Shown in pieces: positions 1,390-52,300 of a DNA stretch of 64,000 nt. The notes beneath the pieces were generated by a model. It worked only from the letters and a program-made list of their open reading frames with translations, was not told where the DNA came from and searched no databases. This stretch comes from Heteronotia binoei. Lineage: Eukaryota. Numbering within the stretch: position 1 is the stretch's first letter; each line of letters starts with the position of its first letter. Both the position numbers and the translations under genes were made by a program. Location of the stretch: NCBI RefSeq assembly GCF_032191835.1, contig NC_083231.1, positions 55,056,001 to 55,120,000 on the forward strand, written 5' to 3'.

Positions 1390-4300
1390 GTAAGTGTCCT
1401 TGGAATTTATTTATTTTTATTTATTTTATTCGATTTATATCCCGCCCTACCCCACCGAATTCATTCAGACAGATTCCAGAACCCCAGATTGCTATGAGTT
1501 GCAAACATATGCAGCTGATACAGCTATAGTTATTTAAGCTCTTTGCTTGACAAACAAGCAGAAATCAAAATAATTAATACTAAGCCTTAAGCCAATCCAA
1601 TAGCTGTTAATTGAAGGGAATGAGAGCATTTTCTCAAGTGTGTTTTGATGCAATGTTTCCTTACAGTTTCTTGGCATTAAAATCACATAAACAGGGTTTT
1701 TTTTCTAGTTACAACTATTAGAAGCTTATAGGAAGTGTTGGGTGCAATCCACATGCACTGTTAGGGGATTCCAATTCATGTCTCCTGCACAATAAGATCA
1801 CATTTTAAAATGGTTAAAACCAGCCCCCCATTAACATACATATCATTAAAATAATTAAAAACACAGTTAAAATACAAACAAAGACATAAAAATGAACAAA
1901 ACACTGGGCAGGAAGGAGGAATCATGGATGAAATGGTAAATGAAACAAAACAGTCTTCAACAACTGGTGGAAAATGGTAACAAAAGGGGACAGATGTATC
2001 TCCCTGGGAGAGAGTTTCAGAGTTTTGTTGCTATGACTGAGAAGGCACTCTTCCACATGTCATAATCTTAGAAGGTGGGTGCACCAAAGACAGGCCTCCA
2101 AAGATAATCATCATGGTTGGAGGTACACGATCCTTCAGAAATGTTGGTCCCAAATAATATGGGGCTTTGAAGGTCAACACCAGCACCTTGACTTGTGCTC
2201 AGAAGAAAATTGAGAGCCAATGAAAGTGGGCCAAGATTATAATGACATGGTTCCTATGACACACACCAGTCAACATGGTGGCTGCAGTGTTCTGTACCAG
2301 TTGAAGTTTCTGAACATTTCTCAAGGGCAGCACCACATAGAGCATATTTCCAAAGATTTATCAAAGGCAGCCCACATAGAGTAATCTAATCTAGACTAGT
2401 CAGGGCTAGATCTTTTCTGCCCAGGGAAGGCTGCAGCTGGCTAACCAGTCAGAGCTGGAGAAAGCCACTCCTAGCTACAGTTATCACCTACTTATCTACT
2501 AGTAGGCCTAAACCCATTTTCACTGGCCCAAGAGCATCCCCAGACTACAGACCTGTTCCTTCAAGGGGAGTGCAACCCATTCCAGAATGGGTGATACCTT
2601 AGATCCTGGGTCAGACCTTCCGTCCATCAGTAGCACTTCTGTCTTGTCAGGATTAAGCTTCAGTTTATTAGCCAACATCCACTCCAGAATCACCTCAGGC
2701 ACTGGTTCAAGGGGTTTTCAGCCTCCATGGGATAAGCTGAAAGTGTGAGATTTATAATATCTATAAGTAGAATACTGTTTATAAAGTTTCCCCCATGACA
2801 ATTTGTTTTGAATGGTGGCATTTATGAAACCTTTGCAAAAACATTTTCAATGGTTCTGTCATTAAAAATATTGGTGAGGAAATGGGCATGCTCAGGGGTT
2901 TTTTTGTAGCAGTAACTCCTTTGCATATTAGACTAAACACCCCTGATGTAGCCAGTCCTCTAAAAGCTTACAGGGATTTTAGTAAAGGGTCTACTGTAAG
3001 TTCCAGGAGGATTGGCTACATCAGGGTTTGTGGCCTAATATGCAAAGGAGTTACTGCTACAAAAAAAGCCCTGGGCATGCTAGTAGGCAAGTTGTATGGG
3101 CAGTTAAGGCTGTAATACATATATGCTTTTTTCTGAAGATTTGTTTTGTGGGGGCACTGCTGAATCGTTTAAAATTTGTAAAGCATAGTGGGGTTTTCAG
3201 CATAAGAATAGAGGATATCTTTTGTGAGCGAACTTCAGTCTGTGGAAGAGACTTAAATAGTTTAATTAATAAATAATTATGGATACAAAATTATTTCTTT
3301 TAGCACTGTAGAGGCAAGTATATTAACCACATAATATTTTACTAAGATTGTAGAATGTGGACTAACACTAGTCCATGTGGGTTTCATTATTAACATTCCA
3401 TGTTTTCCTATAAAACATTCTTTTCCTTATCCTTGAGAAGCTCTGCCTGCCTTCTCCAGACTCTAGATATGTTATAACCTCTTAGTTGTACACTGGATTC
3501 AGGCTTTGATCATTTGGTTCTCACAGTAGCTACACTGAGGAATTAAAATTGCATGGAATATTTTTGTTTCCTTAGTGTAGAATTCTTCAGTTTAAAATGA
3601 CCTAGCGGGTGAAAAGTTCCAGTATATTCTGTATGAGAGAAATGATGCTTGTTTCTTCACAAAGTGTTAATTCACAGCTTTGGGGGGAAAATATAGATCT
3701 AAAAAATGGGTTAACATTTAAGTAGGCTCTGTAGAGTGCCCGTTTCTGTGGTGCACTCCAGAGATACCAGCAAGGAAACTGAGAGCTTAGGCAGCAAACA
3801 TCTGCAAGAGCGGTCTGAGTTGTTCAGCTTAGTTAGTACTGCCATGTCATATATGTTACAGATGTTCAAAAGTATATTCTGTTAAGTGGAGCCTCTAAAC
3901 AACCAGATGCCTGACTTTGGTTGTGCTTTGTCTCTCTTACAGATTTCTTGGAAACAATTTCATACAGAATTTCTTCGGGCGATCCCTATGGAAGATTCTC
4001 CATTGACCCTCAGTATGGCATTATCCGCACCAAAAAATTCCTTGACCATGAAACCGATTGCCACACAGTTCTTACAGTGCAATCACAGCTGGGAAGCTTC
4101 CCTGTCTACAGCAATGCGCAGGTCAACATAACTGTGATAGATGTCAATGACAACCCTCCGGTGTTTGTTATGGAATCTGATATTATACATATATCACATA
4201 GCACAATATCTGGCACAGCTCTGTACTTAGCTCATGCAGAAGACAAAGACAGTGGGCTAAACGGAATGATCAGATACACAATTGTGAGCAATCAATCAGG

Positions 4301-7300
4301 TATTTTTACCATTGATCCGGTTCTTGGAGTGCTGTATCTTGCCAAGTCTCTGGATACCAATAAGCCGAAAGAGTACACAATACGCATTGCAGCTGAAGAT
4401 CATGGAAGTCCTCCTTTGAGTTCTTTGATGGTCCTGACTGTGATTGTTGATGAACAGAAGGCACGCCCCACCTTGAGTTTTGAAAATTTGGTCTATCACG
4501 TGGATGTCAGAGAGACATGTTCCATAGGTGCCATAATTCTTCAAATACAAGCCCAGACATTAGATCCACAATATACCCCTGGGGCATTTGTGTATTCTTT
4601 AGAGCATAACACAGATTCTGCTTTGTTTAGAATTGACCCCAAAACAGGAAACATTTACCTACGAAATGCCTTAGACTATGAACTAACTCAGTCACACAGT
4701 TTTAGAGCTTATGTTACTAGCCCAATGGATAAGCCAGGGCAAAATGCAAGTACATCAGTAATTGTTAGCGTCGTTGATGAAAATGACAATTCTCCTGTGT
4801 TCATGCGTGATGTCTATTTTTTTGAAATTGAAGAAAGTTCATTACCCCAAGGTGTGGTTGGCATACTCACAGCAGTTGACAAGGACTCTGGGAGAAACGG
4901 ACAGCTCTCCTATTTCCTCTTATCTGGTGGCAAATATTTCAAGATCAATTCCAACACAGGTAAAATATTTTACAATCTCCCCATGTTGTTTATGAAAAGT
5001 ATAGTCTCTTCCTAAACAGAAGTGATTGAAATATATCTCTTTTGTAAAAAAATGTGTTGCAACTCCAGATTTAGAACTGAAAGCAGTGAGGTAAAGAGAT
5101 ACACAAAGAAAGAAACAGCCTGACTGACTTTTCTTTATTAGTTGACTTTAACTGTTTTATTTAGTCAAGGGTGATTTTCCTCTGCTAAGGTTGGGGTTGT
5201 AAATGCCGTTAGAATAGAAGTACTGTGATATGAAGTTTGACCAGAGCGATCCCCACCTGACAGACTGAACCCTAAATGCAGCTATTGCAGGTAAGACTTA
5301 AGGTAAACAGTGTGTGTGGGGGGAACCCTTTATTAACTTCCTTGGGTGGAATTAAGATGTTCACTAAAGAGCTTGAAATTATGCCCAAGTGCTGGGCTTG
5401 TGTTACAGTATTGCAGAGAGCAGCTATCAGCCAAGGTTTTATTCTTCAGATAAATCTTTAGCGTTTTGTCAACCTTCGGAATCTCACAGTATAAATATAA
5501 GCTCCTTTGGGGAATTCCAGTTCTTTAGCTAGCTTTCCACGGAAACTGGGATTGAGACAACATAGGGTGCTTCTTTCACACATGCCAAATAATTCCATTT
5601 CAATCCACTTCAGCAACTGTTTGCTAGTGGAATTTACCATTTTACACTGCAAAATCCAGTTGCAAAGTACATTGAAAGTGCATTATTGAGTATGTGTAAA
5701 AGTGCTAATAGTTTTTTAGCCTGTTTATACTCAAAGCCAAGCTTTCAGACTGTATAGGAGCTGATAGTTTGACAGATTTATCTCTCCACTTCCACATGAA
5801 AGGCTCCTTTAGCCATCTGTCACACCCTCATACAGTGAATTGACAAGATATATAAAAGATTTATAAATAATCAGACCAGTAGATCACATGCAGTGTTCCT
5901 ATTTTTTTTAACATATGGCTACAATTAAGCTGGGATTAATTTCAAACAAAATGTGTTTGATTCTACTAGTCTTAACTCTGTACAATAAGATATGTAGTTA
6001 CAAACAACCCACAAAAACATTTAAAAGTAGTACCAGTGGAGACCCTCTAAACTCCTGCAGAACTGCAGAGTCTGGTGACAAAGAGTAGCCCTGTCTTTTC
6101 GTATGTTAGTTAAGATATATAAAACCCATCTGGACAATTTACTTTAGACCCTTTGATTGTATTATCAATTAATACCTTTCATGTCAACAACATCTCTTTG
6201 AATCCATTCGTTGGACTTCTGTAGATTCCTCTAGAGCCAGTTTGGTGTAGTGGTTAAGTGTGCGGACTCTTATCTGGGAGAACCAGGTTTGATTCCCCAC
6301 TCTTCCACTTGCACCTTCAGGAATGGCCTTGGGTCAGCCATAGCTCTTGCAGAGGTTTTCCTTGAAAGGGCAGCTTCTGGGAGAGTCCTCTCAGCCCCAC
6401 CCACCTCATAGGGTGTCTGTTGGGGGAGAGAAGACATAGGAGATTGTAAGCCATTCTGAGTCTCTGATTCAGGGAGAAGGGTGGGATATAAATCTGCAAT
6501 TCTTCTTCTTTGCACTCTCCTTTCTTTATACATTCAGATGCCCTGTAGTACCTGGTTATGAGTCTTCCTGGTCCTTTTGCCTCTTTTTCAGCTTGTTGTC
6601 ATATTCTCCCACTGATGACTGTACTTCAGTTTTTGCTCTGGATTTGCTACTAGTAGGTGTAAAAATTAACCTGACTATATTTATACTTAATGTTTGCTCC
6701 TTTCAACTGTGCTATAGATATAGCTAAAATTGCCTTTGTGGCCCTAGGCATTAGTTGAGGACATCACTGCCAATATCAGTGCAATCCTATAATTTTTGCC
6801 ATGACCTTAAGGGAATATAATTCTGTTTAGGGTTACAATGTGGAACTTTGATTCTGCCTAGAATTTCCACAAGCACAAGAGGATGATTTTCACCAATTCT
6901 GTCCTTCAGCAGCTCAGAATACCCCCAAACTGAAATTCTGCTTCTAGATGACTGGAGGCTCCAGGATAGCTAGGAGGGAGAAATCAAAGATCTTCTACAG
7001 GAGAGAGAAAACAATGAAAATCTGGTATTCCTAGAAATTCTAGGGGGTATCCTGTGTGTAATACTACAATTGTAAATAGAACATAGCCATTTGAAGAGGT
7101 GAAAACTATGAAATCAAATGCCTTATCTAAGATAAACAAAGCCAGCTATTTTAACAAGGTAAAATAAAATGCTTGAAATTCAGCAAAAAGGAATGTGGAA
7201 TGAAAATCAAGCACAAGTGATGAAGACAGCTGGCAAGAGAGGCATTGCATTTTACAGATGTGGAACCTGAGACTGTATACTACACAAAAGTGGTAGTATT

Positions 7301-13300: not shown

Positions 13301-16300
13301 AAAGTTTGAGTCCAGCAGCACCTTTAAGACCAACAAAGTTTCATTCAGGCTGTAAGCTTTCTTGTGCAATCTCACTTCTTCAGAGACAGCCTGTGTCTGA
13401 AGAAGTGTGCTTGCACATGAAAGCTTATAGTTTGAATGAAATTTTGTTGGTCTTAAAAATGCCACTGGATTCAAAGAGAAAGAAGGAAGGGGGAAGGAGT
13501 CGATATGGCTCTCCTGTTGAAATGTTCACCATTCAGACATGGAGGCTTTGTTTGCTGGCTCCCATTTCTCATTATTAAGTGCTGATCTTCTGAAAGCATT
13601 GTTGCTTGGCACAATAGAGAGTAGTTTTGTGTGGTAGATGACATCAGTAGCCTAAACTCCACATTTAAGAAAGTGTCATATAATAGTGCGTAAAACGAAA
13701 TTGTTCCGTTAACCATATTTCAGCTTGATGATTGTTTTTGCTCCCTGGTTGACCGTTTTCTTTTTGAAATAATTTTAAAGCAAAGTCAGGAAAAGCCGTC
13801 TGTATGTGGGTGCTGCGCCTAGTTTTCACTCAACATTTTATATTCTTGCTTCACAGTACATAATGCACAAATGGGTATTTATTTCTGTAGCTTAAAACAA
13901 TTGGTGTACAGGTTAAGGGAAGAGATATTTTTCATGGTATTTTGTGCATGCCATCTTTTCCAGTGGTGGGATTCAAATAAATTAACAACAGGTTCTATGT
14001 CGTAATGACCATTTTAACTATACCAAAAGATATACCGAAAGGCAGTTTAATAATTCACGCATTAAATTATGGAGTTTACTGTGCTAATCCAATGATAATT
14101 ACACTAGGGTTTGTAGAATCTTTCGGGCTCAAGTGCCGTGTTCTACTGGAGAAAGTATTTCTTCCAAAAAAACTTTCTCCAGTAGAACACGGCACTTGAG
14201 CCCGAAAGATGCTACAAACCCTAATGATGATGCCAGCCATGAAAACCTGAAATCTTTGATAATTACACTCTTTCCCCATATGTGAGTTCAAGAATGACTC
14301 GGGGATGCAAACAAAACAGAAGTGTTGTAGAACAAACGGAAGAGTGTGGAATCAAACAGGGCATGGGGCAAACACAAAAGTGTGGAACCTGTTGCCAGAG
14401 GAGGACTGTGGCTCAGCGGTAGAGCCTCAGATTGGCTTGCAGAAGGTCCCAGGTTCAATCCCTGGCATTTCCAATGAAATGGGTTGAGAAGGACATTGAC
14501 CTGAGATCCTGGCTCAGTGTTAGAGCATCCGCTTCACATGCAGAAGGCCCCCGGTTCAGTCCCTGCTATCTCCAGTTCAAAGGACAGCTGGGAAAGACGT
14601 CTTTCTAGCTGGCACCCTCTCAGTAGTCACAGATGTACTGCATTAGATGGGCCAAAGTTCTGACTCTGTATCAAGAAATATCATACATTACACCCTGACA
14701 TGGGCAGCTCAGGCAAGCCTGATCTCATCAGATATCAAAAGATAAGCAGGATCAACTGCAGTTAGTACCTGGATGGGAGATTCCCTTGGAATACCAGCAG
14801 GTGGGAAGACAAGCTGGATTCAGCCACCTCTCTGAATATCCTCCAGAGATACACGCACGCACGCACACACACACACATACACAGAGACTCAGGGTTGAGG
14901 GGGGGCATGATCTATCTAGGTCACCCAGCCCTACGTTTTGCATTATAACCTAACCTGCCATAAAATTAATCAAACTGAAAGAAAAGACAACTTAAAACTT
15001 TCTGAGTAGGGTTGCCAAGTCCAATTTAAGAAATATCTGGGGACTTTGGGGGTGGAGCCAGGAGACTTTGGGGGTGGAGCCAGGAGTCATTGGGGTAGAG
15101 CCAAGATCAAGGCTGTGACAAGCATAATTGAACTCCAAAGGGAGTTCTGGCCATCACATTTAAAGGGGCAGCACACCTTTTCAATGCCTTACTTTTATAG
15201 GAAATAATGAAGGATAGGGGCACCTTCTTTTGGGGCTCATAGAATTGGACCCCCTGGTCCAATCTTTTTGAAACTTGGGGAGTACTTTGGGGAGAGGCAC
15301 TAGATGCTATACTGAAAATTTGGGGCCTCTACCTCAAAAAACAGCCCCCCCAGAGCCCCAGATATCCACAGATCAATTCTCCGTGATTTTCTATGGGAAT
15401 AAATCTCCCTAGGGAATAACAGAGTTCCCAGCAGACATTCCCCCCCCCCGCTTTCTGACGACCCTGAAGTGGGGGGAGGGCCTCCAAACCAGGGGATCCC
15501 TGCCCCCACCTGGGGATTGGCAACCCTATTTCTGAGCCATAGGAGGAAATTGCAATTCAGTTTGGGGCCATGACTGCGAATTGAGAGGGCGTCATCTTTT
15601 CTCGACAGCACCAACAACAGCTAACAAATTGTCAGGATTGGGGGGTGAGGAGAGAGCTGGGGAAGCCAAAATACTATTTTCTATATCACCCTGGGAAGTG
15701 CCAGTATATTATGAACATGAATCTACAAGCCTTGCATGGAGCCCTTCAGTGATATACTGGCACTTCCCAGGGTGATATAGAAAATAATTAATATCAACTA
15801 ACATTTTAAAGAAAATATAACAAACGAAAAAAAAAACCCAAAAGGAACCTTCTGAAGGGAAAGAGCTTCGTCCACTTTTGAGAAGTTCTCCAAGCCGTGG
15901 CAGCGAAGCCTCGGTCTCCCTGGAAATCAGCTGCAGACTCTGAGGACGGCGAAGGCGATGCACGCACACGGCACGCTGCTTTTAGAAGGCACACAGAAGC
16001 CCCACCCCCTGCAAGCACGCCAAAAGCACCCTAGATTGCCTGCTCTCTCCTCTGGAGCCTGGAGGGGGGGAAATGTCCCCGGCAGCCACTCCGCGATGCC
16101 TTCTCTGTGGGGTAAACCTTCACCTTTTCTGTGGGGTAAACGATCTTGCCGCAACGGGCACAGCTGGGGTCATGGCTGCTGGAGCGGAGGGACTGCGCCG
16201 CGCTGGTGGAGTGGAAGGGAAAGGGAGGAAGTGAAGAAGGCAGCCTGGCAGCGGCGAGAAAAATCAGTGTGAGCACCTGCAGGGGTTAAATGGCTGCCAG

Positions 16301-19300
16301 AGCGGAGGAGCTGCTGCTGCCGCCGCGCTGCTGGAGTGGAAGGGGAAGGAAGCAAAGAAGGCAGCTGTGACAGCAAGAAAAATGTGAGCACCTGCAAGGA
16401 GGCGAAGGGAAGCAGGCGCCCGGCCAACAACCGGTTCTGTAGAACCAATAGCAAATTAGGTATGGGTTCTACAGAACCGGTGCTAACCGGCTGAATGCCA
16501 CCTCTGATCTTTTCCCCTTTTGAATATTTAGAACAGATGTGTTATGCTTAAAGGAGAAATGGCTAGAATAAAACATTAAAAAATGGGGAAACCCTAAGCA
16601 CAACTTGACTCTGGCTTTTCTATACAACAAGCTCCAGTGAAATGGATGTATCTCAGATGGAAATGTAAACTGAATAGCAACCAAATCCAGTGGTAGGAAG
16701 GGTCACACTGAATTTGGAGCTGTCTGAGAGGCACCTACACACAGTGGACTTGCAGGGTAGGGTGAAGCAGCTCTTACAACTTCCTTGCTTATAGGAACTC
16801 CTTTTTTATGTGGTGTATGAGCAGTTAACAACTAAGCCCAAAGCAAACAAACTGGAACTCATGAGACTGACTGAGGATTATCAATAGCAGTTTACTTTAT
16901 AATCCTAGTTAAATAATTGCTCCTTGGGCTGAAAAATTAGTGTTACCTTTAAGAGGTGGAGCTCTCTCTAAGGCTTAGAAAATAACCACAGAGTCATGTG
17001 GGTTAACTTTGTACATTCTGGCTGCTGTGGCAGTTGAGGGAGGTTGAGCACAACAAATGGAAGAGTAGGGTTTGGGTAGAAAATCACTCATGAGCATTTG
17101 ACCAGATATTTTTTATATTCCACTTTCCTTAATGTTCAGTTCTATTAATGGTAACATATCTTTTCTAGGAGAAAGTTTAGGTCACTTTCAGATTGACAGC
17201 AGTAGTGGTGAGTTAAGAACTACTGAATCTCTTTTATATAATTGGAAGTCAACCTACAGAATGGTAGTCACTGCAGCTGATCAGGGAATCCCTTCGCTTC
17301 AAGGACAATTGGACATCAATGTTGAGGTACTGGCTTAAGAAAGTATTCTGTTTGGTCTACAGTGAATGTCTTCAGCAAGAGGCAGAACCAAGACGTCTAG
17401 AGCCCCTTCCCTCCCTCTAGTTTAAATGTCTCTCTGCAGAGTGGTTGTGAAAACAGGAAATGTATTATTGGACTTTAAATACATGAGACATTAACTGTGG
17501 CCTGAATAGTTATACCTTCTGCTCCATTATGAGGAAGTGATGGGAAGAGGAGAAAAGCTATAAACCTTTTAAGTGTAGAGGAGAATGCAACATGGAAATT
17601 TAGCTGAGATGCAAAGGTTAACTGTTTTTATTGTCTGTATCCTGTTGCTTCTTTATCTGCTAGTGCTGACCTGATTAGAGATTTTTTTTTTAAAGGAGAG
17701 ACCCTAAATAGGGAGTTCAGGATCCACCAAACAGTTCCACAGAACGCACCCATTTTACATCACAATTCTTGGTTTACCGCCTGATGGGCAAACCACAAAG
17801 ATATGCAAATGTTTAATACATGCATTTTTGTAGCTAGTTTATTTTTGCCACATTCCAAGCCATATATTTTGGTCAGTTATAATTTAATAGCCTCTGTTCA
17901 CTGAAGACTTACTCATTTCTCAGTGGCCTATTCGTGAAAAGAGCATTAATGGCTGGAAATGGCAGCACCTGTAGCTTACTTCCAGAGAGTGTTAAATTCT
18001 ACCCCTGGATGAAATAGCATTTATGGCTTGACAGGATATCAGAGTCTGTTAAAGAATTTTGAACCTTTTACAGTTTGTCACTTTTGGTTTCCTTGTAAGT
18101 TGGTGTATCCCTATTTCTAGAATATTGTTTCCCCATTTATGGGCTGCCCTTCAAGCCCTTTGTTGAAGACTGAGTACTGCTGATATCTCAGGCACTGGAG
18201 CAATAGGTAAATTCTTCCCCAGCTCAGTTTGGAATTTAATTAAACAAGCCTACATATATATTAAAAGAAATCAGTCTGTTTGTTTTTTCCAAGCCCAGTT
18301 CTGAGATTCAGTAACCCTGTTGTGCTTCTGATGACATCACTGGGAGTACTGCAGGACTTCCCCATAGCCAGGTTGGTAGATATGTGGAGGGGTGGGGGGA
18401 ACAGTTTTTCTCAACTTGGTTTACAATCTAAGTTGAATTCTCAGTCATTAATGCTTGACTCAGATTGGGTTATAAACCAAAGTTTGTAATGTGAACCTGG
18501 TTAATTATGAAGTTTAGTTACATCACTTATGCATTGCCACTAAGACAGTCATTTTAGTTAGTTTTAAATAATTATCTAGTTTTTCCCTGTGTGGCTGCTG
18601 GAAGCATTTCAGGCTGTCAAAAAGATCCTTACTGCAGCAATTCCTGCTGTGATTTAATAACCCTTCCACAGAATTGATTGGCAAATTAATCTGTTTATAG
18701 TATGTGTTGTGCTTACAGCTCAAGAGCTCTTTGGGTTACTAGGCCACTGCCCATTTGTAATTAGAGAACAGACATAGACCAGAATCCTCTTGGGAATGCA
18801 AACAATTGTGATTTCTGTTCATTTCTTGCAGGATATGAACATTCATAGAAGTGTATATGCTCAGACTATGAATAATTGATGCCCTTTAAATTACAAAAAA
18901 TGCCAATGCAGTAGAACTTAAAAAAAATTCTTTTGTTTCAGGTGATTCCACTTCCTAAAGCAAGTTCTGCTTCTTTCCAAAACATCAGACATTTTGTCAT
19001 ACCAGAAAATTTTAGGCCTGCACAGACACTGGGCTCTCTAAGACGTCCTGGTCAACATCTGTATACCAGTGAAAAGCAGCGTTATAGCATTTCTGAAGAA
19101 GACTCTGATGTTCCATTTGAAGTCGACAGCTCCTGTGGGGATCTTCTTCTTTCCAAAGAAATAGATTATGAAGCAGCATCTCGCTACTTCTTCAGAGTGG
19201 TTGTAAATGATGATCAAAACAGTCTTCCACAAAACAGTACTATTTTTGTCAGTATTGATATTGAAGATCAAAATGACCACTCACCTTCTTTCCAGAATGA

Positions 19301-22300
19301 CTTTATTGTTATTGGTGTAGAGGAAAACGTGCCTGTTGGCACTTTGGTATATACATTTAACGCAAGAGATGGGGACGGCAGTTTTCTGAACAGCAACGTA
19401 CGATATTCTTTACACAGGAATAACTTCAGTGAAAATCCATTTCTCATCCATCCTTTTTATGGTAGCTTAATCACAGACATCCCCCTAGACCGTGAGATGG
19501 TGCAATCTGTTATCCTGACAGTTGTGGCAGCTGATCAAGCTGTAAACTTTACTGACCGCAGACAAGATTCACTGACTGCCAAAATAATCATTTTGGATGT
19601 CAATGACAACCACCCTACCTTTCTTTCATCACCTCTCTCCTACATCAGAGAAGATGCAGAGATAGGCTCCCCAGTACACTCCATAGTTGCTCATGATCCA
19701 GACCAAGGAAGGAATGGACAGATCACATATTATCTTCTCTCGAGTAATGAAGACCACATGTTTTCACTGGACAGATCTTCAGGTAAAGTCAAATTGGCTT
19801 CAGTGAAATTTCAGTCAGAATTATCTTAATCTAAGCTTTTTAATAAGACAATAACTGCACATACAGCAAGAATGATATAGAAAGAGGTCTTTTCAACACA
19901 CCAAATATTTTCTTCCCTAGACTATTTCTATTTGGGGTAACAGCATGTTGAGGGCATGTATGGCAGAAGCTCTTTCTGCTTGTGCGCAGTCCAGCCTACA
20001 GTGAGCTCAGCATGTGCCATAGAAAGGGAGAAGAAACTGCAAATTACATGTGATTGTGTCAAATAACAAGGTCCCTACAGACCTCTGCTCTGAACTCCAT
20101 GATGTGGCAGTCAAACCTTAATAAACGCTGAGGTGAGGCCGATACATAAAGACTGTTCATAACACGTGTCGATCCATGGTTATGGACAGTTAACAGTAGC
20201 TTGATGTGATGTCCAAATTGACATTTTGCTGGTTTGTGTCAGCAAATCAGAATTGGAAACCGTAGTTTGACTCATGTTTGTGCTAATTATGACATTCTGT
20301 GCCATCTGAATCGACAAGCGGAATTTACATTAGTCATTCCACCTCCAGAAGGCACTGCATCAGAAGAGAAAAGTGTTGAGTATATAAGTAATGGTGATTC
20401 CCTAAGCATGACCTTTTCAGTGCTGTTATCTGCCTGCAAGCAAATTCTTCCTGTTGGTAGAGTTTGAGAATGGTTCAGGGTACAGGAATAAAGAAAGACA
20501 AACAAAACCAGTGAAACACACTTACTTTTGCAACAAAATAAATAGCAGCTGCAAGTATTTTAATGACAAGCATCCAGCTGAAAACCACATTAATTCTAAT
20601 CTGCCTGCAAACCCAATATCATGCTCCTGTCTCAGTGTTGGAGCCTCACCTCCAAGCTCAGTTGTAAAGTGTGTGAAAAATCACATGCATTCTCAATTTG
20701 GCATACAGCAATTGCTTCTCCAGGTAGTCTGGTGGTATTCTCAGAAAGTTGCTACTGAATTAGAATTCCCAAGGGTAAAGCTTTAGCTCATAAAATAAAG
20801 AGTTATCCTTGAGCATTTGGCATCTCAAACCAAATGTTTGGCCTCCAAATTACAGTTATCACAAACCGTAGTTTGGCATTACTTGTGATCCAAGCCATGG
20901 TAATATTGTAATGACAGAAGCTGCACTGGAATAAATCAATGTCCATGTGTTGATTCTTCCTCTTTACAATAGGACTGCTAACAATCACTTTTGCTTTGGA
21001 CTGTGAAAACCAAGAGTATTACAACTTGACCATTGTGGCTGTGGATGGTGGCACTCCAGCACTGTCTGCAACTCAAATTCTGACGATAATTGTTCTTGAT
21101 GTAAATGATGAGCCACCAGTGTTTACAAAAAATCAATATCAGGCTTCCATCTATGAAAATAAAGATCCAGGAGAAGTTGTCATTAAAATGAAAGCTACAG
21201 ATAAAGATTCAGGTAATCAGCTCTCTCCCACCCCATCCCCCCAAAAGATGTTCTTGTCATATGGAAAATGTGATACTCTCCTGTCTCCTTTTTGATACAA
21301 ACTCCTAATTTTCGACTCAAATTCTTTGTCTAGATTTTTTTTACATACGGAACTCCTGCCAGAGTTCAGTTGTAGTTTGTTCACGCAGGTGGTCTAAATT
21401 CATACAGAAGTGGTTTTGATTACATTTGTGCATCTATATCTACAACATTAGACTTAAAAAAATGAGTAAAAAGCTCTGAAGATATCCTGGTCTGTTCCTT
21501 TTCTGCTATGTATGCAACATTAACTGATCACAGATTTTTGCACACAACAACAGATGGTAGGTGCTGGTTCTGGATAAGGCTCACTGCACATTCCTCTGTA
21601 GAACCGATGGCTGGATGTGGATTGGTAAATGTAGCAAGCAGATTACACTGAGAAAGTCCTCCTCGGCCACTTTTTCAGAAGCAGTTTGCCACAAAGGACA
21701 TTGTACTGATTATTGCAAATACGCAATAATCTGATTTGGCCAGAGTGAGGCACTGTAATCCCAGACATTTTTCATCAACAAATGAACTGATACAAAGGCT
21801 TACTTAAAATTTATTTTTCTAGTTAAAAGCTAAGGTTAAGAACAAAAGGAGAATGGTGTGAGCTCACAATATTTTCACACTCTTAGGCTGAAGAAAAAAT
21901 TATATGGTTTTAGGGGAATTCAATTCTAGAAGGGATTATACAACTCTGCTCTGGTAAGACCTCACCTGGAGTATTGTGTTCAGTTTTGGGCACCACATTT
22001 TAAGAAGGATATAGACAAGCTGTCTATAATGCAGAGGAGGGTGACAAAGATGGTGAGGGGTCTGGAGATCAAGTTCTATGAAGAAAAGCTGAAGGAGCTG
22101 AGCATGTTTAGCCTGGAGAGGAGGTGGCTGAGAAGTGATATGATCACCATCTTCAAGTACTTGAAGGGCTGTCATACAGAGGATGATGTGGAATTGTTTT
22201 CTGTGGCCCCAGAAGGTAGGACCAGAACCAATGGGTTGAAATTAAAACAAAAGAGTTTCCGGCTCAACATTAGGAAGAACTTCCTGATCATTAGAGCTGT

Positions 22301-25300: not shown

Positions 25301-28300
25301 TTCTCAGACGTCATAGCTTTTCCTTCATATGTAAATCTGTGTCACAACCTGTACATTTTCGTTGCCTTCTTGAGAACCTTGAGACTACTTCTGCAAATAC
25401 AGGATGCCTTTGATTTTCAGCTCCTGTTGATATCTAGAGTTTCAAGAAGTCTTTTAATGTAATGTAGTATTTTGAGAGAGAGAGAAATCCTACTGGGTGT
25501 ATGCAAACTCTTGGACAGTCCTGAAAATGCTTTTTAGATCTTCTTTAGAGTTTTTAAGTCCTTCCCCTAAAGCTGCCCTGAGCCTGCATAATAGAACAGA
25601 AATTATTTACATGATTAAATAACATGCAGGAAACACTACAGAGATAATTATGAATCTATTTCTATTTCTCTATGAATTTATTTCTAGACTCCTTTGTGTG
25701 AAACATTTACTCAAGGAGCTAGCTAATAAACCAGTATGAGATGTTACTGATTTCTGCTTTGTATTTTAAGGAACCAATTCTCTGCTTCAGTATGAAATTC
25801 TTCCGGGACCTGGGCATGGGATTTTTCAGATAAACTCTGATACCGGTGAGATTACATCAGCCATTTCACTTGATAGGGAGACACAAGATACCTTCACTAT
25901 TAAAGGTAAAAATAATTGGAATGTGACATGGAAAGCTTCATGTTATGTAGGCATCTAACTATGCTGGACATGATCCCGTGGACATTGAGTCAGTTTAATG
26001 GATGTTGTATAAATTGTGCATGTGATTGAAGTGTTACTTTTTTCATTGGGATTTTATTGGAAAGAAATTCACTGTGTCTTACACTCATTGTCCTCAAATT
26101 CAGTGGAAAAAGAACAGTGTAGTATTTTCAAAAATATGTGCTTATGTTTTGTCTTAGGAGGAATCTAGCATTACCAGGTCTGTGTTGGAAAATACCTGGA
26201 GATTTTAGGGGTGGATCCAGGAAAGGGCAGGGTTTGGGGAAGGAAGGGGCCTCAGTATGGTACAATGCCATAGAGTCTGCCCATCAAAGCAGCCATTTTC
26301 TCCAGGGAGCTGATCTCTGCCAGCTGGAGATCAGTTGTAAAAGCTGGAAATCTCCAGGCCCCATCTGGAAGCTGGCAACCCTAACTCAGGAATATCATAT
26401 TTAGTTAGCTGTTCTGATATTACAGTTTAGCAGTCAAACTACCTGAATGTGGTATTAAAAATTAGCTCTGTTATGTGCCTCTCTACTCAGTGCTGGCTCG
26501 AGACAGTGGAAGCCCTGTTTTATTCAGCACAGCATCAGTTGTCATCAGAATACTGGATGAAAATGACCATTCTCCGAAGTTCCTCCTTCCTGCTTCTGAG
26601 ATCCAGATTCTGGAGAATCAAGACCCTTCAGTAATATCATCTATACTGGCTGTGGATATGGATGCTACCAATAATGGAGCTGTGCGATGTCACATCATTG
26701 GTAAAGTACAGTGCTTTCTAATGACAAACATTTCAAAACAAATGTTTATTCTTTGCAATTACATTTATGGCCCACTGTTCTCACTGAGGTTCAAGGCAGA
26801 AATCCAAAGCTATTTTATTTAGCTTTATTTTTTTTTTAAACATTCCATTTATGTTACAAGTTGTGTTCTTTGGCCCATTTTACGCATTTGTTAAAGCCTT
26901 GTGCTTAACTGTGCAATCCTAAACAAAATTGCACCCTCTAAAACCATTATTTGTCCGTTTAGGATTACACTGGAAATCACTGTGTCCTGCAATACAGGAA
27001 ATAAACTTGTGCTTGCTGGAGTTATATTAGGTCAGTGTACCCAGAGTGAAACTGTAGCATCTCTCTTTCAAGCAAATAGGGTCCTGTCTGTAAAAATGTT
27101 GCTAACTAGTGCAGCCAGTATGACTTGCACTATGAGAAATTCTGAGCCACATAATTCCTTTCCTTTTACCATTTTTTTTATCAATCCTCTTGTCCAAAGA
27201 GGTATTAGTGTAAAGGGATGTTTTTTGATATGTACTGTATTTTAGATGATAGATTTCTGCTACCCACCCTGTTCTGTTCCGGATTCAAATGTGTGTGTCT
27301 GTGTTTTAATCTTTGGTCTACTAAGAGAATATTTTGGAGATTTTGGATCTCATTAAATGAAAAAAATGGCAGTGGCTCATAGGGTGTGGCACACTTTATT
27401 CACCTCCTCTCCAAATTCAGGCCATTTTTCAGCAGTCCCAAAACAGAAGTTTTTTCATACAGAATATTCCCCAGTCCAACCTCTAGCCTCTGCTGGACAT
27501 TAGACCGCAGTTGTTGAGAGATATATCTTTCTCTGCTTAAAACCCTGGAAACAGTTGCCAGTTCAGAGGAGACAATTATTAAACAATGGTCCACTGGTCT
27601 GATTTGGTAAAAGACAACTTCATATGTTCATATCCCTTTTTTGTTCATACACACCTTTGCCGCAGAAATTTTCTGCTTCGCTTTTTTAAAATTAAAAAAT
27701 CCTATATTCTGACTTCCCATAATTGCTTCACAATCTTTGTTCATTTTTTAAAACAAATAACATTAATACTTCAGCCCAACTCATGTAGATGGGAATGAGC
27801 AAAATACCTCTATGCCTTTTTTGCAGTTAATGTAGATTTGGACTGTTTCACTGATGCTGGCAAATACTGTCTTGCTCAGAAGCACAATTACAACAGATTT
27901 TACAAGGTGAATTTGGGGAGGATGGAGGGAAGACATCCATCTGGCACAAGGGTTGCTTTGTAAATTGATGCTTTGCATTTACTGTCATCACTGTCCACAA
28001 ACTTAAATGAAAACCAGGTTTTTATTCTCATAAAAGTTGGGGATCCAGGTACCCTAAGGCACATTGTTTAAAAAAACTGGATTATATTGCTGCTTTTAGC
28101 TGAGTTGGCCTACAGAGAGAGTTTCAGAATTGTAACTAGTCCACTGACCTTTATTTTTTGCTTCATTTTAAAAGATGGAAATGTTAGGGGATACTTTGCT
28201 TTGAATGAAACTTCTGGAGCCCTCTCCACCACTTGTGCCTTGGACAGAGAAACTGTCAGCAACTTTACTCTCATCATTGAGTGCTTTGACTTGGGCAATC

Positions 28301-31300
28301 CACAGAAAAGTTCCATGACCCACGTACAGCTCACCGTCCTTGATGAAAATGACAACAGTCCTTTGTTTTCAAGGAACCACTATCAAACCTCTGTGAGAGA
28401 AGACTTTGGAGAAGGATCAGCAGTTCTTGAACTGCAAGCTGTTGATGGAGATGAGGGCCCAAATGGAGAGGTTCGATACTCTATCATGGATGATACCCTT
28501 GGAACATTTACCATTAACCGGATTACTGGCACAGTAACTACGGCAAAACCACTGGACCGGGAGAAAAAATCTCACTATATATTCAGAGTGGTGGCAACTG
28601 ACTCAGGAATCCTGGGACCAAGAAGCAGCAGTGTTACTGTCACTGTGCTAATTGAGGATGTCAATGATAATAGCCCTTTTTTCCTACAGAATCCTGTCAA
28701 AGCTTCTGTGCCTTTTCAGACATCTGTGAATCAGACCATAGCTACTGTGAAGGCCAGTGACCTAGACTTAGGTTTGAATGGTGCTGTGAATTTTATGTTT
28801 GAAACACCAGAAACCATGCTTCAGGTGGACCCAAATACAGGTGAAATCTTTCTTCAAGAACCTATACCTCATGAGGGTTTTGTTACCTACCTCCTCATAT
28901 TGGCCTCTGATCAAGGAGTTCCAGCTAGAACAGCTACTGCTGTTTTGGCCATCACTTCTGAAACATTAACAGAGACTATTTCACTCTGTCACAGTCAGTA
29001 TGAAGTAACCATGCCTGAAAACACTGAAAAAGGTAGGTAGCCTGTTATAATTTGTGCTTACTACACAGTTTTGCTATCATGAATTCTTATACAAAATAAA
29101 GCAGCCTATTACTTTGGGGATTTTGAACCTGAATGTCTTTTGAAAATAGCTTAATAGCCATTATGATGTTGGCAAGGTGCGATCTGCTAGCTTTCTTGGT
29201 TTTTGAATTTTCAAAGATATACTGTACCACAAATTAGGAAAGGAAATTTGACACTACACCACAGTCTCATCTTTCTGTTCTGCTAATTCATTATTCTTCA
29301 TAGATAGCCATTATAAGCTTTGTAATTAGAATTCAGCAAGATGACCAAAATGTTGATGCATACTCTTTTAATGGATTTGCCAGAGGAACAAAATTTGAAG
29401 TTTAACAAATTGATGTAGTCGCTCCAGGCACACTTGAGGTTGGTTGAATATTACAGTGATTTCTTAAACCTTTTCAAGCCCACTGATTTCAGTGGACTTA
29501 GAAAGGTGCAATTATGCCTATAATGGAACAGGAGGTTTTATGTACAGTGGGAAACATACATATGTGTGCTATAATATGTAATTTTCAGTCATTTAAAATC
29601 AAAGTTATACAGATATAATAAAGAGGAGGAACCATGACTCAGTGGTAGATCATTTGCCTGGCATATAGATGGTCCCAGGTTCAGTCCTTAGCATCTGCAG
29701 TTAAAGGATTTGGCAGTAGGTGATGTACAAGATGGTGAGACCCTGGAGAGCTACTGCGAGACTAAGTAGACAGTACTGACTTTGATGGATTCCGTGTAAG
29801 GCAGGTTCATGTTTTCAAGATTCTAAGCTTCCTGTTGAACATAAACTATGTAAAAATATACCATGGTCAAACCCTATTATTTGGAAATAAGTTCTACAAA
29901 GCAGCAGGAGTTGCATCCAGATAATGAACATTAGGGTTCAACTGGACAATTCTAAGACTGGGAGATTAGTTTTTATTGTCATTCCATGAACAACATCTAT
30001 GAACAAAGGAAAACTTTCTTGTGTGATCTTATCTATAAATGTTACAGTCCTTTTTATTATATATTTTTATTTTAATTACCCCAAACAGAAAGAGATTAAA
30101 ATATAATAGCAGTGGTGGCAGGTTCACAAATATGCCTTTATAAAATATGTCCACGCACAATTGTTATCTATATAGCATATATTCAAATGTTGCTAAAGTA
30201 GTAAAGTCCTAGGTCTATTGGATTACTGGAGGTGTGCATGTATTTTTCCAGTGCTGTAATGTAAGTCTTTTAGGAACAGTAAGAGCATGGATAGTCCATT
30301 TTAGTTGACCATTAGTTAGTCTCCAGGAGATGGGCAAATAGTTTAAATGTTCATAAGCCTTCTCAGAGATGAATGAATACTGTAATACAAAATTGATATG
30401 AGTAATTACTTCTGACAATTTAACTAGAAGCAAAGAAATATTTATTTTTGTCTTTTATTTTTTCCTGTTGTTTTGGGGTAGAAACAGGTTTGTGGTGGGG
30501 TTACAACCCTGTGGTGCCTCCATTTTACCCTATGGGAATCAGTCTCCATAGGGAATAATGGAGTGCCCAGCAGATGCTTCCCTCCCCCCTGCACTTTCTG
30601 ATGACCCTGAAATGGGGGAAGGGCCTCCAAACCAGAGGATCCCCTGCCCCCAAAAGGGGATTGGCAGCCATAAACCTGACATATTATTATGAAAAATATA
30701 TTTATATAGTTAGCATGAAGACAGACAATTTAATGAAAATATACCACAGATCAAATAGCAAACAAAACAAAAAAGCTAACTTTGTCTACCTAGCTTTGTC
30801 AGGAGCTATGTTAGGTGGCGAAGGCCTCTAATGTGCGCCCTACTGTCTCAACAATTACAAAGCATAGTAGGAGTAGGTTAAAGTTGTCAGGCTCAAGTCC
30901 TCACTCCAAAAATGCTCCAAAATGAATCCCAACAGACTAACAGTTTTTGCTTTGTTTCAGATAAACCTTTTTCCAGGGAATATTTTGGTTTTGTTGTCAT
31001 TCCAAAAGGAATTTGGCTGATGCTCTGTTCCTTTAATTTTTGATGCCTCTTCTCAGTCAGTATGGAGTATCCAATTCAATATATTTTCTCACCTGGACAG
31101 TTATGCTAATCTCATATCATTTACTTCATGGATGTCATAGCCATTGCTAACATTTAGCTCACATTAATCACTGGACAGACATATGGAGTACTCAATAGAG
31201 AGAAAAAGCAATGTGAACCTTGGTGGATGGTGATATTTTGTATTTATATTTGAGTGCAATATTGTAAGAATTTAAACACAAGAATTTCAGTAAATTTATT

Positions 31301-49300: not shown

Positions 49301-52300
49301 GAATTCCTTCTTCCCTTATTGTGTTCCAGGCTCCACCACCCATCTTAAGCCTGGCATTGACAACAACATTGAATTATTATTTTTAAATGGTTCCTTGACT
49401 ACTCAATCAGTAGACTATTACATTTAAAGTAACAACCATTCACAATAGAGGATTCACTTTTTCAAAACTTAAATTAACTGTTATTTCACCTCAGCAGTAT
49501 ACTGGTCTGAAATGTTAAGGCCCTTAAAATAGGGGCTTCAGAGGGGAAGTGCTGACAGAAGTTTAATTTAAATGTCTTGGTTGAGATGTTTTTATGGCGT
49601 TTTCTTTTTCACTGAAACCTAAGGAACCGATTATTTTAGTAAATATTTCCATATGTACCTTACTGATATACATTCTAGACAAAATATGAAATTATGTGTG
49701 TTTACAAACTCAAATGCAAGTCTGTAATTCAAGTAATATGTTCTGACAATTTTTGAGCCACAAAAACTTAGAGCAGAACTGGTGTGGTAGATGAATGGCA
49801 GTGGATTCTGTAGATTAAATTTCAGTTTATTGTGCCCAGCTCTCTTGTGCAAATAATAATAATGCCATTTGTCACTTTTGAAAGGAAGTTGCTGTGTCAA
49901 ATATGAAGAAGATGAATTCTGCGTATTGGTTTAATAAGTGTATATTCTGGCATCCCAAGTTTTGAAGTAAATTATAATGAAATTCATAATAAAAGACAGG
50001 CTTCTAAAGGCAAAGGAAAAATACCGCTTATTAATTTAAACCTGTTTACAGTATGTAAAACATCCAACATCCATGAAGTATCAGTGTCAGTCCCTAGTCT
50101 TGCTCTCCCTGCCACCCTTTTTATCAGTTTATGGTTCACAAACTCTGTCTTTTCCCAGAACTATATTCATGATGATGAATTAATATTATTGGTATTTATC
50201 TTGACATTCTGAAGCAATTTAATTGGATTGCTTTATTCTTTTATGTGTAACTTTGCAAAAAGCATTCTTAACAGATCCAGAGTGCTTTTCTTTAAAGAGA
50301 GGTAACTGTTTACTGTTCACAGCCAGGCAGGCATTCCAATCCAGTGATCATCCAGACTCTCTGTCCACATCTTAATGCAGAGATTGGACGCATGTCCACA
50401 TCAGACTACTATGGGTATTACTAATCGAAAACTCACTTTGGAGTGTGGATAATTCTGGAGTGAGTCCATTGAATATTTCTTAAAGGTGACAAGAGTGCAA
50501 TACCTGTAGCTGTTTTGTATAAAAAATATTAAGCATTTTGAGAATATTGATAAAAGAACAATAGGGCAAGATCCATTTTAGCAGAACAATGCTCGTGAAA
50601 CAAGTGTTCCTGCCTCTCCCCTTCAAGGCTGTCCTGAGCCTCTTTTACCCCCAAAAATCATGTTCTTGAGGAGAGGAAAGTTTGCAGAGAGAGGAGATGA
50701 TTTCCCTTCCTCTTTTCCCATGGGAGAAAATGTGTTCTGTTAGTGAAAAACATAGCTAGGATCCACCCTACAGAAATATATAGATATTTTATTTCTGGAA
50801 GATGTTAACATGATGACCTTGTTGTGGCTAATTTTTAATAGGTTGGTTTTACAAGCTGCTGATGGGGGAGCTCCCAGGCTATCAGCTACGAGCACAATAG
50901 AAATACAAGTAGTGGATGTCAATGATAATGTTCCAACTCTCCAGCCACTAGGCACAGTGGAACTCCCTGAAAGTAAGTGGGGTGACTGCTAGGCTGTAAT
51001 ATACATTTTTGAAATGGCAATGGCTGTTCAAAAGTAGTACTTAATTGGGCATTACATGCAGAGAATGCTTCATTTTCTGGTGTTTGTTTTTGTAGCCTTT
51101 CCAGACCCATGGAAAGATTGTACACTGGGTCACAGAACCAGATGGAGGAATAGCCACAGAAGTCGGGGGCAGGGTAGCTGAAATAGTTCCTTCTTCTTCC
51201 ACAAGGGCAGTTCCACTGAGGATAGGGGAAGCGGTCTCTCCTCATCCCCTTGTTCTTCCTCATTCCAGTTTACTGCCTCACATACCTCTTCCTCTGTATA
51301 GCTCCTACAACGCCAAGATTAATAATTGGGGGGTGGGGGGAGGGCTGAAAGAACTTCTGGAAAGGAGAGAGAGAAACATAAGAAAATGTCATAGATACTG
51401 CCCATTAAATGCTTAATATTCTTGTGGTATATTTATGCTAACTGTTTATAGAAGCCTTTGAAGTCACAAGTATTGGTTAAAATATACTGCTACAAGAGTC
51501 AGATGTCAAACGCCTGAGATTTAGTTTTTGTTTCCATTTTGGGAAAATAAATGCAATTCATAAGCCAGTACTCCCTTATTAAATGTTGCTATTCTGGTTT
51601 TGTTTACAGAAGTAACACTGATGTTATGAAAATAAAATAACGATAAGGAATCCACTGAAGACAGTAGAACTAAATAGGGATGCTAGAGATCTTCTTCGTG
51701 GTCTCTGTGCAGTCCCACACATGGGTCTTGCCGCAGGCAACGGATCCATTCCTCGGAGCTCCAATAGCTCGTTTATAACGTCTTTTGGCGCGCTTTCCTC
51801 CCGCTCTGGGGAGCAGGCAGCGACCGCGCATGCCTGGAGCGGGGGGAGAGCGCCCCTTCCACTCAGTTTCTTTCCTACCGCCGCCCGGACAACACCTCCC
51901 TCGCTGCGTTCCTCCTTAGCTCGTCTGTTACTTCATCCGCTTCTTTCCTCCTTCACTGGTATCGTATTTCTATCTCTTATATCTTCTCTTTCGTCCCAAA
52001 AAAAAAAACAAAAAAAAAACAAAAAAAAAACCCCGTTCTGCGCTTTCTTTCCCCTTTTCTCCCTTCCCCCCCCTCCCTTGTCCGGGGCGCATGGAAGGGA
52101 AAGTTACCTTCAAAAAGTGCACGCGCTGTGGGACCAAAATCCCTACTACAGACGGCCACAGCCACTGCCTTTTTTGCTTGGGGGAATCTCACCGAGTCGA
52201 CTCCTGCCCTCATTGTGCGAATTTCGGAAAGCAGGCCCGAAAAAACCGCGCGGCAAGGCTCCGGAGTTTCCTGATCGAGTTGTCCTTAAGGGCTATGCCC

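What the first reader, a model, noticed from the sequence alone, without database searches (positions are those of the whole stretch)
16099..16290. LASP1 N-terminal fragment captured inside a hAT transposon
Seen: the minus strand reads gcagccATG AC CCC AGC TGT GCC CGT TGC GGC AAG ATC GTT TAC CCC ACA GAA AAG GTG. Known (from memory): LASP1 begins [20 protein letters not shown], and LASP2/NEBL has KVVY, so the 14-residue run [14 protein letters not shown] points to LASP1. It has a Kozak-like context, a 1-nt deletion after the ATG, a GC-rich leader and a 24-nt duplication (VYPTEK twice). No downstream LASP1 sequence or poly(A) follows, so it does not look like a processed pseudogene. Inference: a host first-exon piece was picked up by a DNA transposon (Pack-TIR-like capture) and placed antisense in a DCHS2 intron.
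Basis: partly seen in the sequence, partly recalled or inferred. Interest (0 to 1): 0.85.

Follow-up and report, generated by a model that had tools for sequence, protein, structure and literature searches.

The report
LASP1 first-exon fragment inside hAT transposon
A 2.5-kb cut-and-paste (hAT-type) transposon in an intron of a gecko cadherin gene carries a broken copy of the 5' leader and first 18 codons of the LASP1 gene; this is a genuine but apparently dead example of a known kind of gene-fragment capture.

Summary

- **LASP1 fragment.** The minus strand at 16173-16119 reads the start of LASP1. It matches squamate LASP1 residues 3-18 at 16 of 16 positions, including the squamate-specific Ser4. 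One base is missing after the ATG.
- **Nucleotide match.** The coding piece and its leader align to the LASP1 loci of two other geckos (85-86% identity, E 4e-18). The last 23 nt before the ATG match Gekko LASP1 at 19/23. Nebulette and mammalian LASP1 controls match at 9/23, which is chance level.
- **Cargo layout.** The leader is present twice in tandem, and 19 nt of coding sequence are repeated at a 24-nt spacing. The exon stops five codons short of its splice donor. No other LASP1 exon lies in the 64-kb window.
- **Carrier.** The fragment begins about 80 bp inside one end of a non-autonomous hAT element (13961-16506). The element has 15-nt terminal inverted repeats (13/15) and a perfect 8-bp target duplication, ATCTTTTC.
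- **Orientation.** The fragment lies antisense to a dachsous-like cadherin gene.
- **Class.** It is a Pack-hAT (Pack-TIR), a class catalogued in animals by Tan et al. 2021.

The scan has noted more than ten similar captures elsewhere in this genome. I could not test copy number, the same-genome parent locus or expression.

The parts
13953..13960 (.). Left copy of the 8-bp target-site duplication, ATCTTTTC
   Evidence: Read directly from the sequence; identical to 16507-16514.
13961..14100 (+). Left end of the hAT element; the terminal inverted repeat CAGTGGTGGGATTCA is at 13961-13975
   Evidence: Exact pattern match. AT-rich subterminal DNA that shares only the 15-nt terminus with the other end.
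14102..14226 (.). Nested palindromic MITE-like insertion, 59-nt arms, 95% complementary
   Evidence: Inverted repeat I2.
14402..14583 (+). Nested tRNA-derived SINE heads, two tandem tRNA-like units
   Evidence: ARAGORN tRNA-Ala-like call at 14402-14473; direct repeat D1.
15008..15528 (.). Nested hAT-like MITE with TAGGGTTGCCA... ends and its own 8-bp duplication TTTCTGAG
   Evidence: Read from the sequence.
15675..15786 (.). Nested palindromic MITE, 35-nt perfect arms
   Evidence: Inverted repeat I3.
15843..16098 (-). GC-rich cargo of unknown source (GC 0.62, CpG observed/expected 0.62); either a second captured piece or filler DNA
   Evidence: Composition. No similarity to the two gecko LASP1 loci or to the rest of the window.
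16099..16117 (-). Repeated copy of the 19-nt VYPTEK segment, 24 nt downstream of the original; marks a template-switch junction
   Evidence: Direct repeat D11, 18/19 identical.
16119..16173 (-). LASP1 coding fragment: the ATG and codons 2-18 plus 2 nt, with 1 nt missing after the ATG. Exon 1 is cut 5 codons before its splice donor.
16174..16287 (-). Proximal copy of the LASP1 5' leader, reaching about -115 from the ATG
   Evidence: 19/23 anchored identity to Gekko LASP1; anchored alignment z 5.1, 0 of 500 shuffles as good.
16282..16426 (-). Distal copy of the LASP1 leader, about -147 to +9, ending in a decayed start (CCATTTAACCCC). Its junction with the proximal copy lies at a shared ACCCC.
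   Evidence: Anchored alignment z 6.3, 0 of 500 shuffles as good.
16427..16506 (-). Right end of the hAT element: terminal inverted repeat CAGAGGTGGCATTCA at 16492-16506 and a subterminal 26-nt palindrome at 16430-16481
   Evidence: (I4).
16507..16514 (.). Right copy of the 8-bp target-site duplication, ATCTTTTC
   Evidence: Read directly from the sequence.

Best explanation
This is a Pack-hAT: a non-autonomous hAT transposon whose interior was partly replaced by host DNA. The host DNA covers roughly -147 to +56 of the LASP1 gene, that is, the 5' leader and the first 18 codons of exon 1. The most likely mechanism (inferred, not shown) is repair of a double-strand break in the element by copying from an ectopic template, with several template switches. 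Those switches would explain three features: the tandem doubling of the leader at a shared ACCCC, the 19-nt repeat of the VYPTEK segment, and the abrupt change to unrelated GC-rich DNA. The cargo is a dead pseudo-exon. It is frameshifted after the ATG, lacks the exon's splice donor and has no further exons. It now lies antisense in an intron of a dachsous-like cadherin gene, and the element later received at least four nested repeat insertions. Whether capture happened before the element inserted here or in place afterwards is unresolved.
For: LASP1 identity:
- The top PDB hit is LASP-1, E 3.2e-6.
- The fragment matches squamate LASP1 residues 3-18 at 16/16, including Ser4. Mammals and turtle have Asn4; nebulette has Gln4 and Val11.
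- blastn places window 16196-16119 on Gekko LASP1 exon 1 at 85% identity and on Eublepharis at 86.5%, both E 4e-18. These are the only hits of the whole element in those loci.
- All seven substitutions against the Gekko coding sequence are synonymous third-position changes.
- The 5' leader matches Gekko at 19/23 (P about 7e-6) and Eublepharis at 15/23. The NEBL and mammalian LASP1 controls match at 9/23.
- Both whole leader copies align to Gekko -180..-1 with z 5.1 and 6.3, and 0 of 500 shuffles score as well.

Transposon:
- The termini match 13/15.
- The 8-bp duplication is perfect.
- There is no long ORF and no transposase in the element.

Known class: Tan et al. 2021 report 370 Pack-TIRs in 100 animal genomes, 208 of them hAT, with microhomology at breakpoints (PMC8277862).
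Against: - The parent LASP1 locus of this same genome could not be examined, so the breakpoints and microhomologies are inferred from orthologues that are tens of millions of years diverged.
- The two element ends share only the 15-nt terminus. No second copy of either end was available to confirm that they belong to one hAT family.
- The source of 15843-16098 is unknown.
- The two leader copies are only 86% identical. That sits oddly with a coding piece that has no amino-acid change.
- Capture by template switching is a model taken from the literature. Nothing here shows it.
Confidence: 0.8

Rival explanations
1. In-place gap filling. A plain hAT element was already in this intron, and a later break inside it was repaired by copying from LASP1. 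On this reading the cargo never transposed and is single-copy. This is a variant of the best explanation, not a contradiction of it.
For: Tan et al. 2021 conclude that most single-copy animal Pack-TIRs arise this way. No second copy of the cargo lies in this window. No other note in the scan mentions LASP1, although a blank there carries little weight.
Against: The cargo starts only about 80 bp from one terminus, whereas Tan et al. report breakpoints skewed towards the interior of elements. The scan's unchecked notes list many hAT elements in this genome with different first-exon cargo, which fits capture while the family was active. Neither point is decisive.
Confidence: 0.4
2. The captured CpG-rich LASP1 leader is not inert. 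It acts as an orphan CpG-island promoter or regulatory element that gives antisense transcripts within the cadherin gene.
For: The cargo keeps CpG observed/expected at 0.58-0.62 and GC at 0.61. Native gecko LASP1 islands score 0.63-0.75 and the flanks 0.05-0.19. This is despite enough age for four nested insertions and 14% divergence between the leader copies. [quoted passage not shown]
Against: No RNA or DNA sequencing run was listed for this stretch, so there is no expression or methylation evidence. It is unknown whether -147..-1 includes the LASP1 transcription start or core promoter. The retained CpGs may simply mean the capture is younger than the leader divergence suggests.
Confidence: 0.1
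3. The LASP1 piece is a processed pseudogene, or a remnant of a segmental duplication, that lies between two unrelated hAT ends by coincidence.
For: The two ends share only 15 nt.
Against: Only the 5'-most roughly 200 nt of the gene are present. There is no exon 2 or later sequence and no poly(A), whereas retrocopies are 3'-biased. LASP1 homology starts right at the hAT subterminal palindrome. One perfect 8-bp duplication flanks the whole unit.
Confidence: 0.03
4. The resemblance to LASP1 is due to chance.
For: The coding piece is only 17 codons long. A search of 1.8 billion representative proteins gave no hit at E of 0.001 or better, as expected for so short a query.
Against: The match covers protein and nucleotides, and continues into the untranslated leader, anchored at the ATG. 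The lineage-specific Ser4 is present.
Confidence: 0.01

Closest known systems
Pack-TIR / Pack-hAT elements of animals (Tan et al. 2021, Nat Commun, PMC8277862)
   Same: A non-autonomous TIR element with a target duplication carries a short non-coding-competent fragment of a host gene. The junctions show duplication or microhomology that suggests template switching. The cited frog example also carries a 5' UTR piece inside a hAT (hAT-N8_XT with CAPSL).
   Different: Copy number, parent locus and age were not determined here. The host is a gecko, and neither 'gecko' nor 'Anolis' appears in that paper's main text. The cargo is a doubled leader plus a truncated first coding exon followed by unrelated GC-rich DNA.
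Pack-MULEs of rice and other plants
   Same: Capture of GC-rich 5' gene fragments by a DNA transposon. The fragments are often chimeric and usually non-coding.
   Different: A different superfamily (Mutator, with 9-bp duplications and long TIRs). Pack-MULEs number in the thousands and are often multicopy and transcribed. None of that is shown here.
Maize Ds-type deletion derivatives with filler DNA (Ac/Ds, hAT superfamily)
   Same: A hAT element keeps its ends while the interior is replaced during faulty gap repair, with short duplications at the junctions. This comparison rests on established knowledge, not on a test made here.
   Different: The filler here is an identifiable host gene start taken from another locus. 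No autonomous partner element was identified.
Processed pseudogene (L1-mediated retrocopy)
   Same: A dead copy of part of a gene at an unrelated locus.
   Different: The piece is 5'-only, has no poly(A) and no spliced exons, and sits inside TIR and 8-bp TSD boundaries.

Membership tests
Pack-TIR (Pack-hAT) | Terminal inverted repeats typical of the superfamily at both ends | tested here: met
   CAGTGGTGGGATTCA at 13961-13975 (+) and CAGAGGTGGCATTCA at 16492-16506 (-), 13/15 matching. Only the terminus is shared between the two ends.
Pack-TIR (Pack-hAT) | 8-bp target-site duplication flanking the whole unit | tested here: met
   ATCTTTTC at 13953-13960 and at 16507-16514, 8/8 identical.
Pack-TIR (Pack-hAT) | Internal sequence derived from a host gene and not from a transposon | tested here: met
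   LASP1 5' leader plus codons 1-18: 85-86% identity to Gekko and Eublepharis LASP1 exon 1, E 4e-18; leader 19/23 identical; Ser4 signature present.
Pack-TIR (Pack-hAT) | A parental copy exists elsewhere in the same genome | not testable with these tools
   No tool reaches this genome outside the window. No sequencing run was listed.
Pack-TIR (Pack-hAT) | No transposase of its own (non-autonomous) | tested here: met
   ORFs within 13961-16506 are 105 aa or shorter and lie in nested repeats or GC-rich cargo.
Pack-TIR (Pack-hAT) | The ends belong to a repeated hAT family of the genome | not testable with these tools
   No other copy of either end lies in the 64-kb window. The scan's notes on similar elements are unchecked and give no sequences.
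Processed pseudogene | Spliced multi-exon content, 3' bias and a poly(A) tail | tested here: not met
   Only residues 2-18 of LASP1 are found in the window. No poly(A) follows the fragment.
Functional LASP1 / LIM-domain coding exon | Intact reading frame from the ATG, a complete exon and its splice donor | tested here: not met
   From the ATG the frame gives [17 protein letters not shown] and then a stop. The exon ends at GTGAA, 13 nt short of the GACAAG|gt donor seen in geckos. There is no Pfam LIM hit.
CpG island | At least 200 bp, GC at least 0.5, CpG observed/expected at least 0.6 | tested here: inconclusive
   The whole cargo is 547 bp with GC 0.61 and observed/expected 0.58. The LASP1 part is 308 bp with 0.62. 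Both are borderline.

The most novel reading that the evidence does not exclude
This element may be one of hundreds in a genome-wide Pack-hAT system in this gecko that preferentially picks up CpG-island first exons. That would be an animal counterpart of rice Pack-MULEs, and far denser than the roughly 4 Pack-TIRs per genome reported for animals. On this reading the dispersed islands, including this LASP1 leader, stay unmethylated and act as new promoters, here antisense within a cadherin gene.
Probability: 0.15. Interest if true: 0.65.

Novelty: new member of a known kind. Interest (0 to 1): 0.35.

Why it matters
Taken alone, this is a clean reptile example of a DNA transposon carrying a host first-exon fragment. 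The capture breakpoints are unusually easy to read: a doubled leader, a 19-nt repeat and a switch to foreign DNA. That is useful for understanding how such chimeras form. It adds no function, because the cargo cannot encode LASP1. Its wider value depends on the pattern in this genome. The scan has noted more than ten hAT elements with different first-exon or CpG-island cargo in the few percent of the genome read so far. If a whole-genome census confirms that, it would show a 5'-biased gene-capture system in a vertebrate that scatters promoter-like DNA.

Tried and rejected
- **Sequencing runs.** The look-up of sequencing runs on the cargo, kinds 'any' and 'rna': none was listed. Read laying could therefore not be used, and there is no depth, copy-number or expression evidence.
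- **Representative-protein search.** The 44-aa frame against the 1.8-billion-protein library gave 0 hits at E of 0.001 or better. This is expected for a 17-residue match and is not informative.
- **Homologous-protein search.** The 84-aa open frame (region 39-84) returned no candidates because of the length filter.
- **Pfam.** No family hit for the 44-aa frame; it is too short for the LIM model.
- **Local alignment of the leader.** With strict scores the leader against the gecko upstream regions gave only z 1.8-3.5. I replaced this with alignments anchored at the ATG.
- **Paroedura LASP1 locus.** No DNA was returned because the gene range exceeds 100 kb.
- **Cluster listing.** Two listings of the LASP1 cluster did not show a protein from the window's own species.
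- **GC-rich tail 15843-16098.** No similarity to the two gecko LASP1 loci or to the rest of the window, and no recognisable coding frame.
- **Scan findings by sequence.** Blank for both the hAT end and the cargo. The operators state that a blank here means nothing.
- **Composite-transposon reading.** I considered two complete hAT elements moving the DNA between them. I rejected it because no inner TIR lies next to the cargo, and the cargo is rearranged rather than one contiguous host segment.

Full report
**Observation.**
- On the minus strand the window reads GCAGCC-ATG (16173-16171). The next bases, shifted by one missing nucleotide, encode [16 protein letters not shown] and end at GTGAA (16119).
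- A phmmer search of all PDB chain sequences puts LASP-1 (1zfo_A) first at E 3.2e-6. Other LIM proteins score E above 0.1.
- The 19-nt VYPTEK segment recurs 24 nt downstream at 18/19 identity (D11).
- One feature was missed. The roughly 120-nt leader is itself tandemly duplicated (16164-16296 and 16282-16420). The distal copy ends in CCATTTAACCCC, a decayed ATGAACCCC.

**Is it LASP1?** I had no access to the rest of this genome, so I reached real LASP1 sequences indirectly.
- A degenerate DNA pattern for CARCGK[I/V]VYPTEKV, searched in the metagenome collection, returned two mammalian LASP1 mRNA contigs (L002, L003) and a nebulette/LASP2 exon 1 (L001).
- The full LASP1 protein encoded by L002 retrieved squamate LASP1 proteins.
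- Through those proteins I obtained the LASP1 loci of Gekko japonicus (L004) and Eublepharis macularius (L005).
- All squamate LASP1 proteins examined begin [23 protein letters not shown], apart from a single G8S change in Eublepharis. The cargo matches residues 3-18 at 16/16 against the Gekko and Paroedura sequences.
- The match includes Ser4, where mammals and turtle have Asn. Nebulette has Gln4 and Val11.
- At nucleotide level, the only part of the 2.5-kb element that hits these loci is window 16196-16119. It aligns to exon 1 plus the adjoining leader at 85% (Gekko) and 86.5% (Eublepharis), E 4e-18.
- All seven substitutions against the Gekko coding sequence are synonymous third-position differences.

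**The leader.**
- Anchored at the ATG and ungapped, the last 23 nt of both cargo leader copies match Gekko LASP1 at 19/23 (P about 7e-6).
- They match Eublepharis at 15/23. That is the same as Gekko against Eublepharis.
- The nebulette and mammalian LASP1 controls match at 9/23, which is chance level.
- A 3'-anchored semi-global alignment of each whole leader copy against Gekko -180..-1 gives z 5.1 and 6.3, with 0 of 500 dinucleotide shuffles as good. The signal is weaker against Eublepharis and absent against the controls.
- The distal copy aligns back to about -147, directly next to the hAT subterminal palindrome.
The caveat is that orthologues stood in for the species' own gene.

**The carrier.**
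- CAGTGGTGGGATTCA (13961-13975, +) and CAGAGGTGGCATTCA (16492-16506, -) are 13/15 inverted termini.
- The 8 bp outside each terminus are identical, ATCTTTTC. This is the hAT hallmark.
- The element has no transposase ORF.
- It contains later insertions:
  - a palindromic MITE at 14102-14226;
  - tRNA-derived SINE heads at 14402-14583;
  - a hAT-like MITE at 15008-15528 with its own 8-bp duplication TTTCTGAG;
  - another palindromic MITE at 15675-15786.
- Beyond the 15-nt terminus the two ends are unrelated.
- No other copy of either end or of the cargo lies in the window.

**What the cargo is not.**
- tblastn with three gecko LASP1 proteins finds no other exon in 64 kb, and no poly(A) follows the fragment. 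It is therefore not a processed pseudogene.
- From the ATG the frame runs 17 codons to a stop.
- The exon is cut 13 nt before the GACAAG|gt donor seen in geckos. It cannot encode LASP1 or splice as exon 1 does.
- The 256 bp after the LASP1 piece (15843-16098) are GC-rich, but match neither gecko LASP1 locus nor anything else in the window. Their source is unknown.

**Mechanism (inferred).** The layout along the minus strand is:
1. the hAT end;
2. LASP1 -147..+9;
3. LASP1 about -120..+56, joined to the previous piece at a shared ACCCC;
4. the 19-nt repeat;
5. foreign GC-rich DNA.

This is what repeated template switching during synthesis-dependent repair of a break in the element would leave. 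It is the model proposed for Pack-MULEs and for animal Pack-TIRs, for which Tan et al. 2021 report microhomology at most breakpoints (PMC8277862). Two variants remain open: capture before the element transposed here, or in-place gap filling of a resident hAT. Tan et al. favour the second for single-copy cases. I could not determine copy number, so I leave this at roughly even odds.

**Context.**
- The host gene runs on the + strand, with cadherin-repeat exons at 3921-5015, 18933-19829 and 28087-29040 and a terminal exon at 60201-62825.
- Its nearest Atlas cluster is 'Dachsous-like'. I did not verify that the paralogue is DCHS2.
- The cargo keeps island-like composition: GC 0.61 and CpG observed/expected 0.58. 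Native gecko LASP1 islands score 0.63-0.75 and the flanks 0.05-0.19.
- That could mean the capture is recent or that the cargo is protected from methylation. There are no data to decide, since no sequencing run was listed.

**Comparison and novelty.**
- This is a new member of a known kind. Tan et al. catalogued 370 Pack-TIRs in 100 animal genomes, 208 of them hAT, including a frog hAT that carries a 5' UTR fragment.
- The scan has already noted the same phenomenon on other DNA of this genome: CCDC50, TERT/RAB26, CHCHD3, LONRF1, SLC22A31, KLHL21, MSC and other cargos.
- Those are unchecked AI notes. If they hold, the density would be far above published animal figures, with a bias towards first exons and CpG islands.
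- That genome-level pattern, rather than this single dead fragment, is what could be of real interest.

**Verdict.** Movement with the cargo and the DCHS2 identity remain unproven. Interest is modest.

Noticed in passing
window 51689-58015: A DIRS-like retroelement with long open frames of 837, 699 and 941 aa on the + strand looks largely intact.
   Followed up: no
window 15008-15528: A 521-bp MITE with TAGGGTTGCCA... inverted ends and a perfect 8-bp duplication (TTTCTGAG), nested inside the larger hAT element. It carries a 22-nt tandem repeat at 15042-15103.
   Followed up: partly
window 13305-13475, 14102-14226 and 15675-15786: Three near-perfect palindromic units with 85-, 59- and 35-nt arms, probably foldback MITEs, within 2.5 kb.
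   Followed up: no
L002 and L003 (metagenome contigs ERZ786672 and ERZ786673): Two 'metagenome' contigs are spliced mammalian LASP1 mRNA, which indicates host transcript contamination of those assemblies.
   Followed up: no
window 13961-16506 compared with L004 and L005: None of the nested SINE or MITE sequences of the element hit the 60-kb LASP1 loci of Gekko or Eublepharis at E below 0.01. This suggests that these repeat families are lineage-specific.
   Followed up: no
window 16076-16098 (minus strand): The first bases of the unknown GC-rich tail contain, in reverse complement, CGGCAGCCA, a 9-mer also present just before the LASP1 ATG. This may be a trace of an inverted template switch, or chance.
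   Followed up: no
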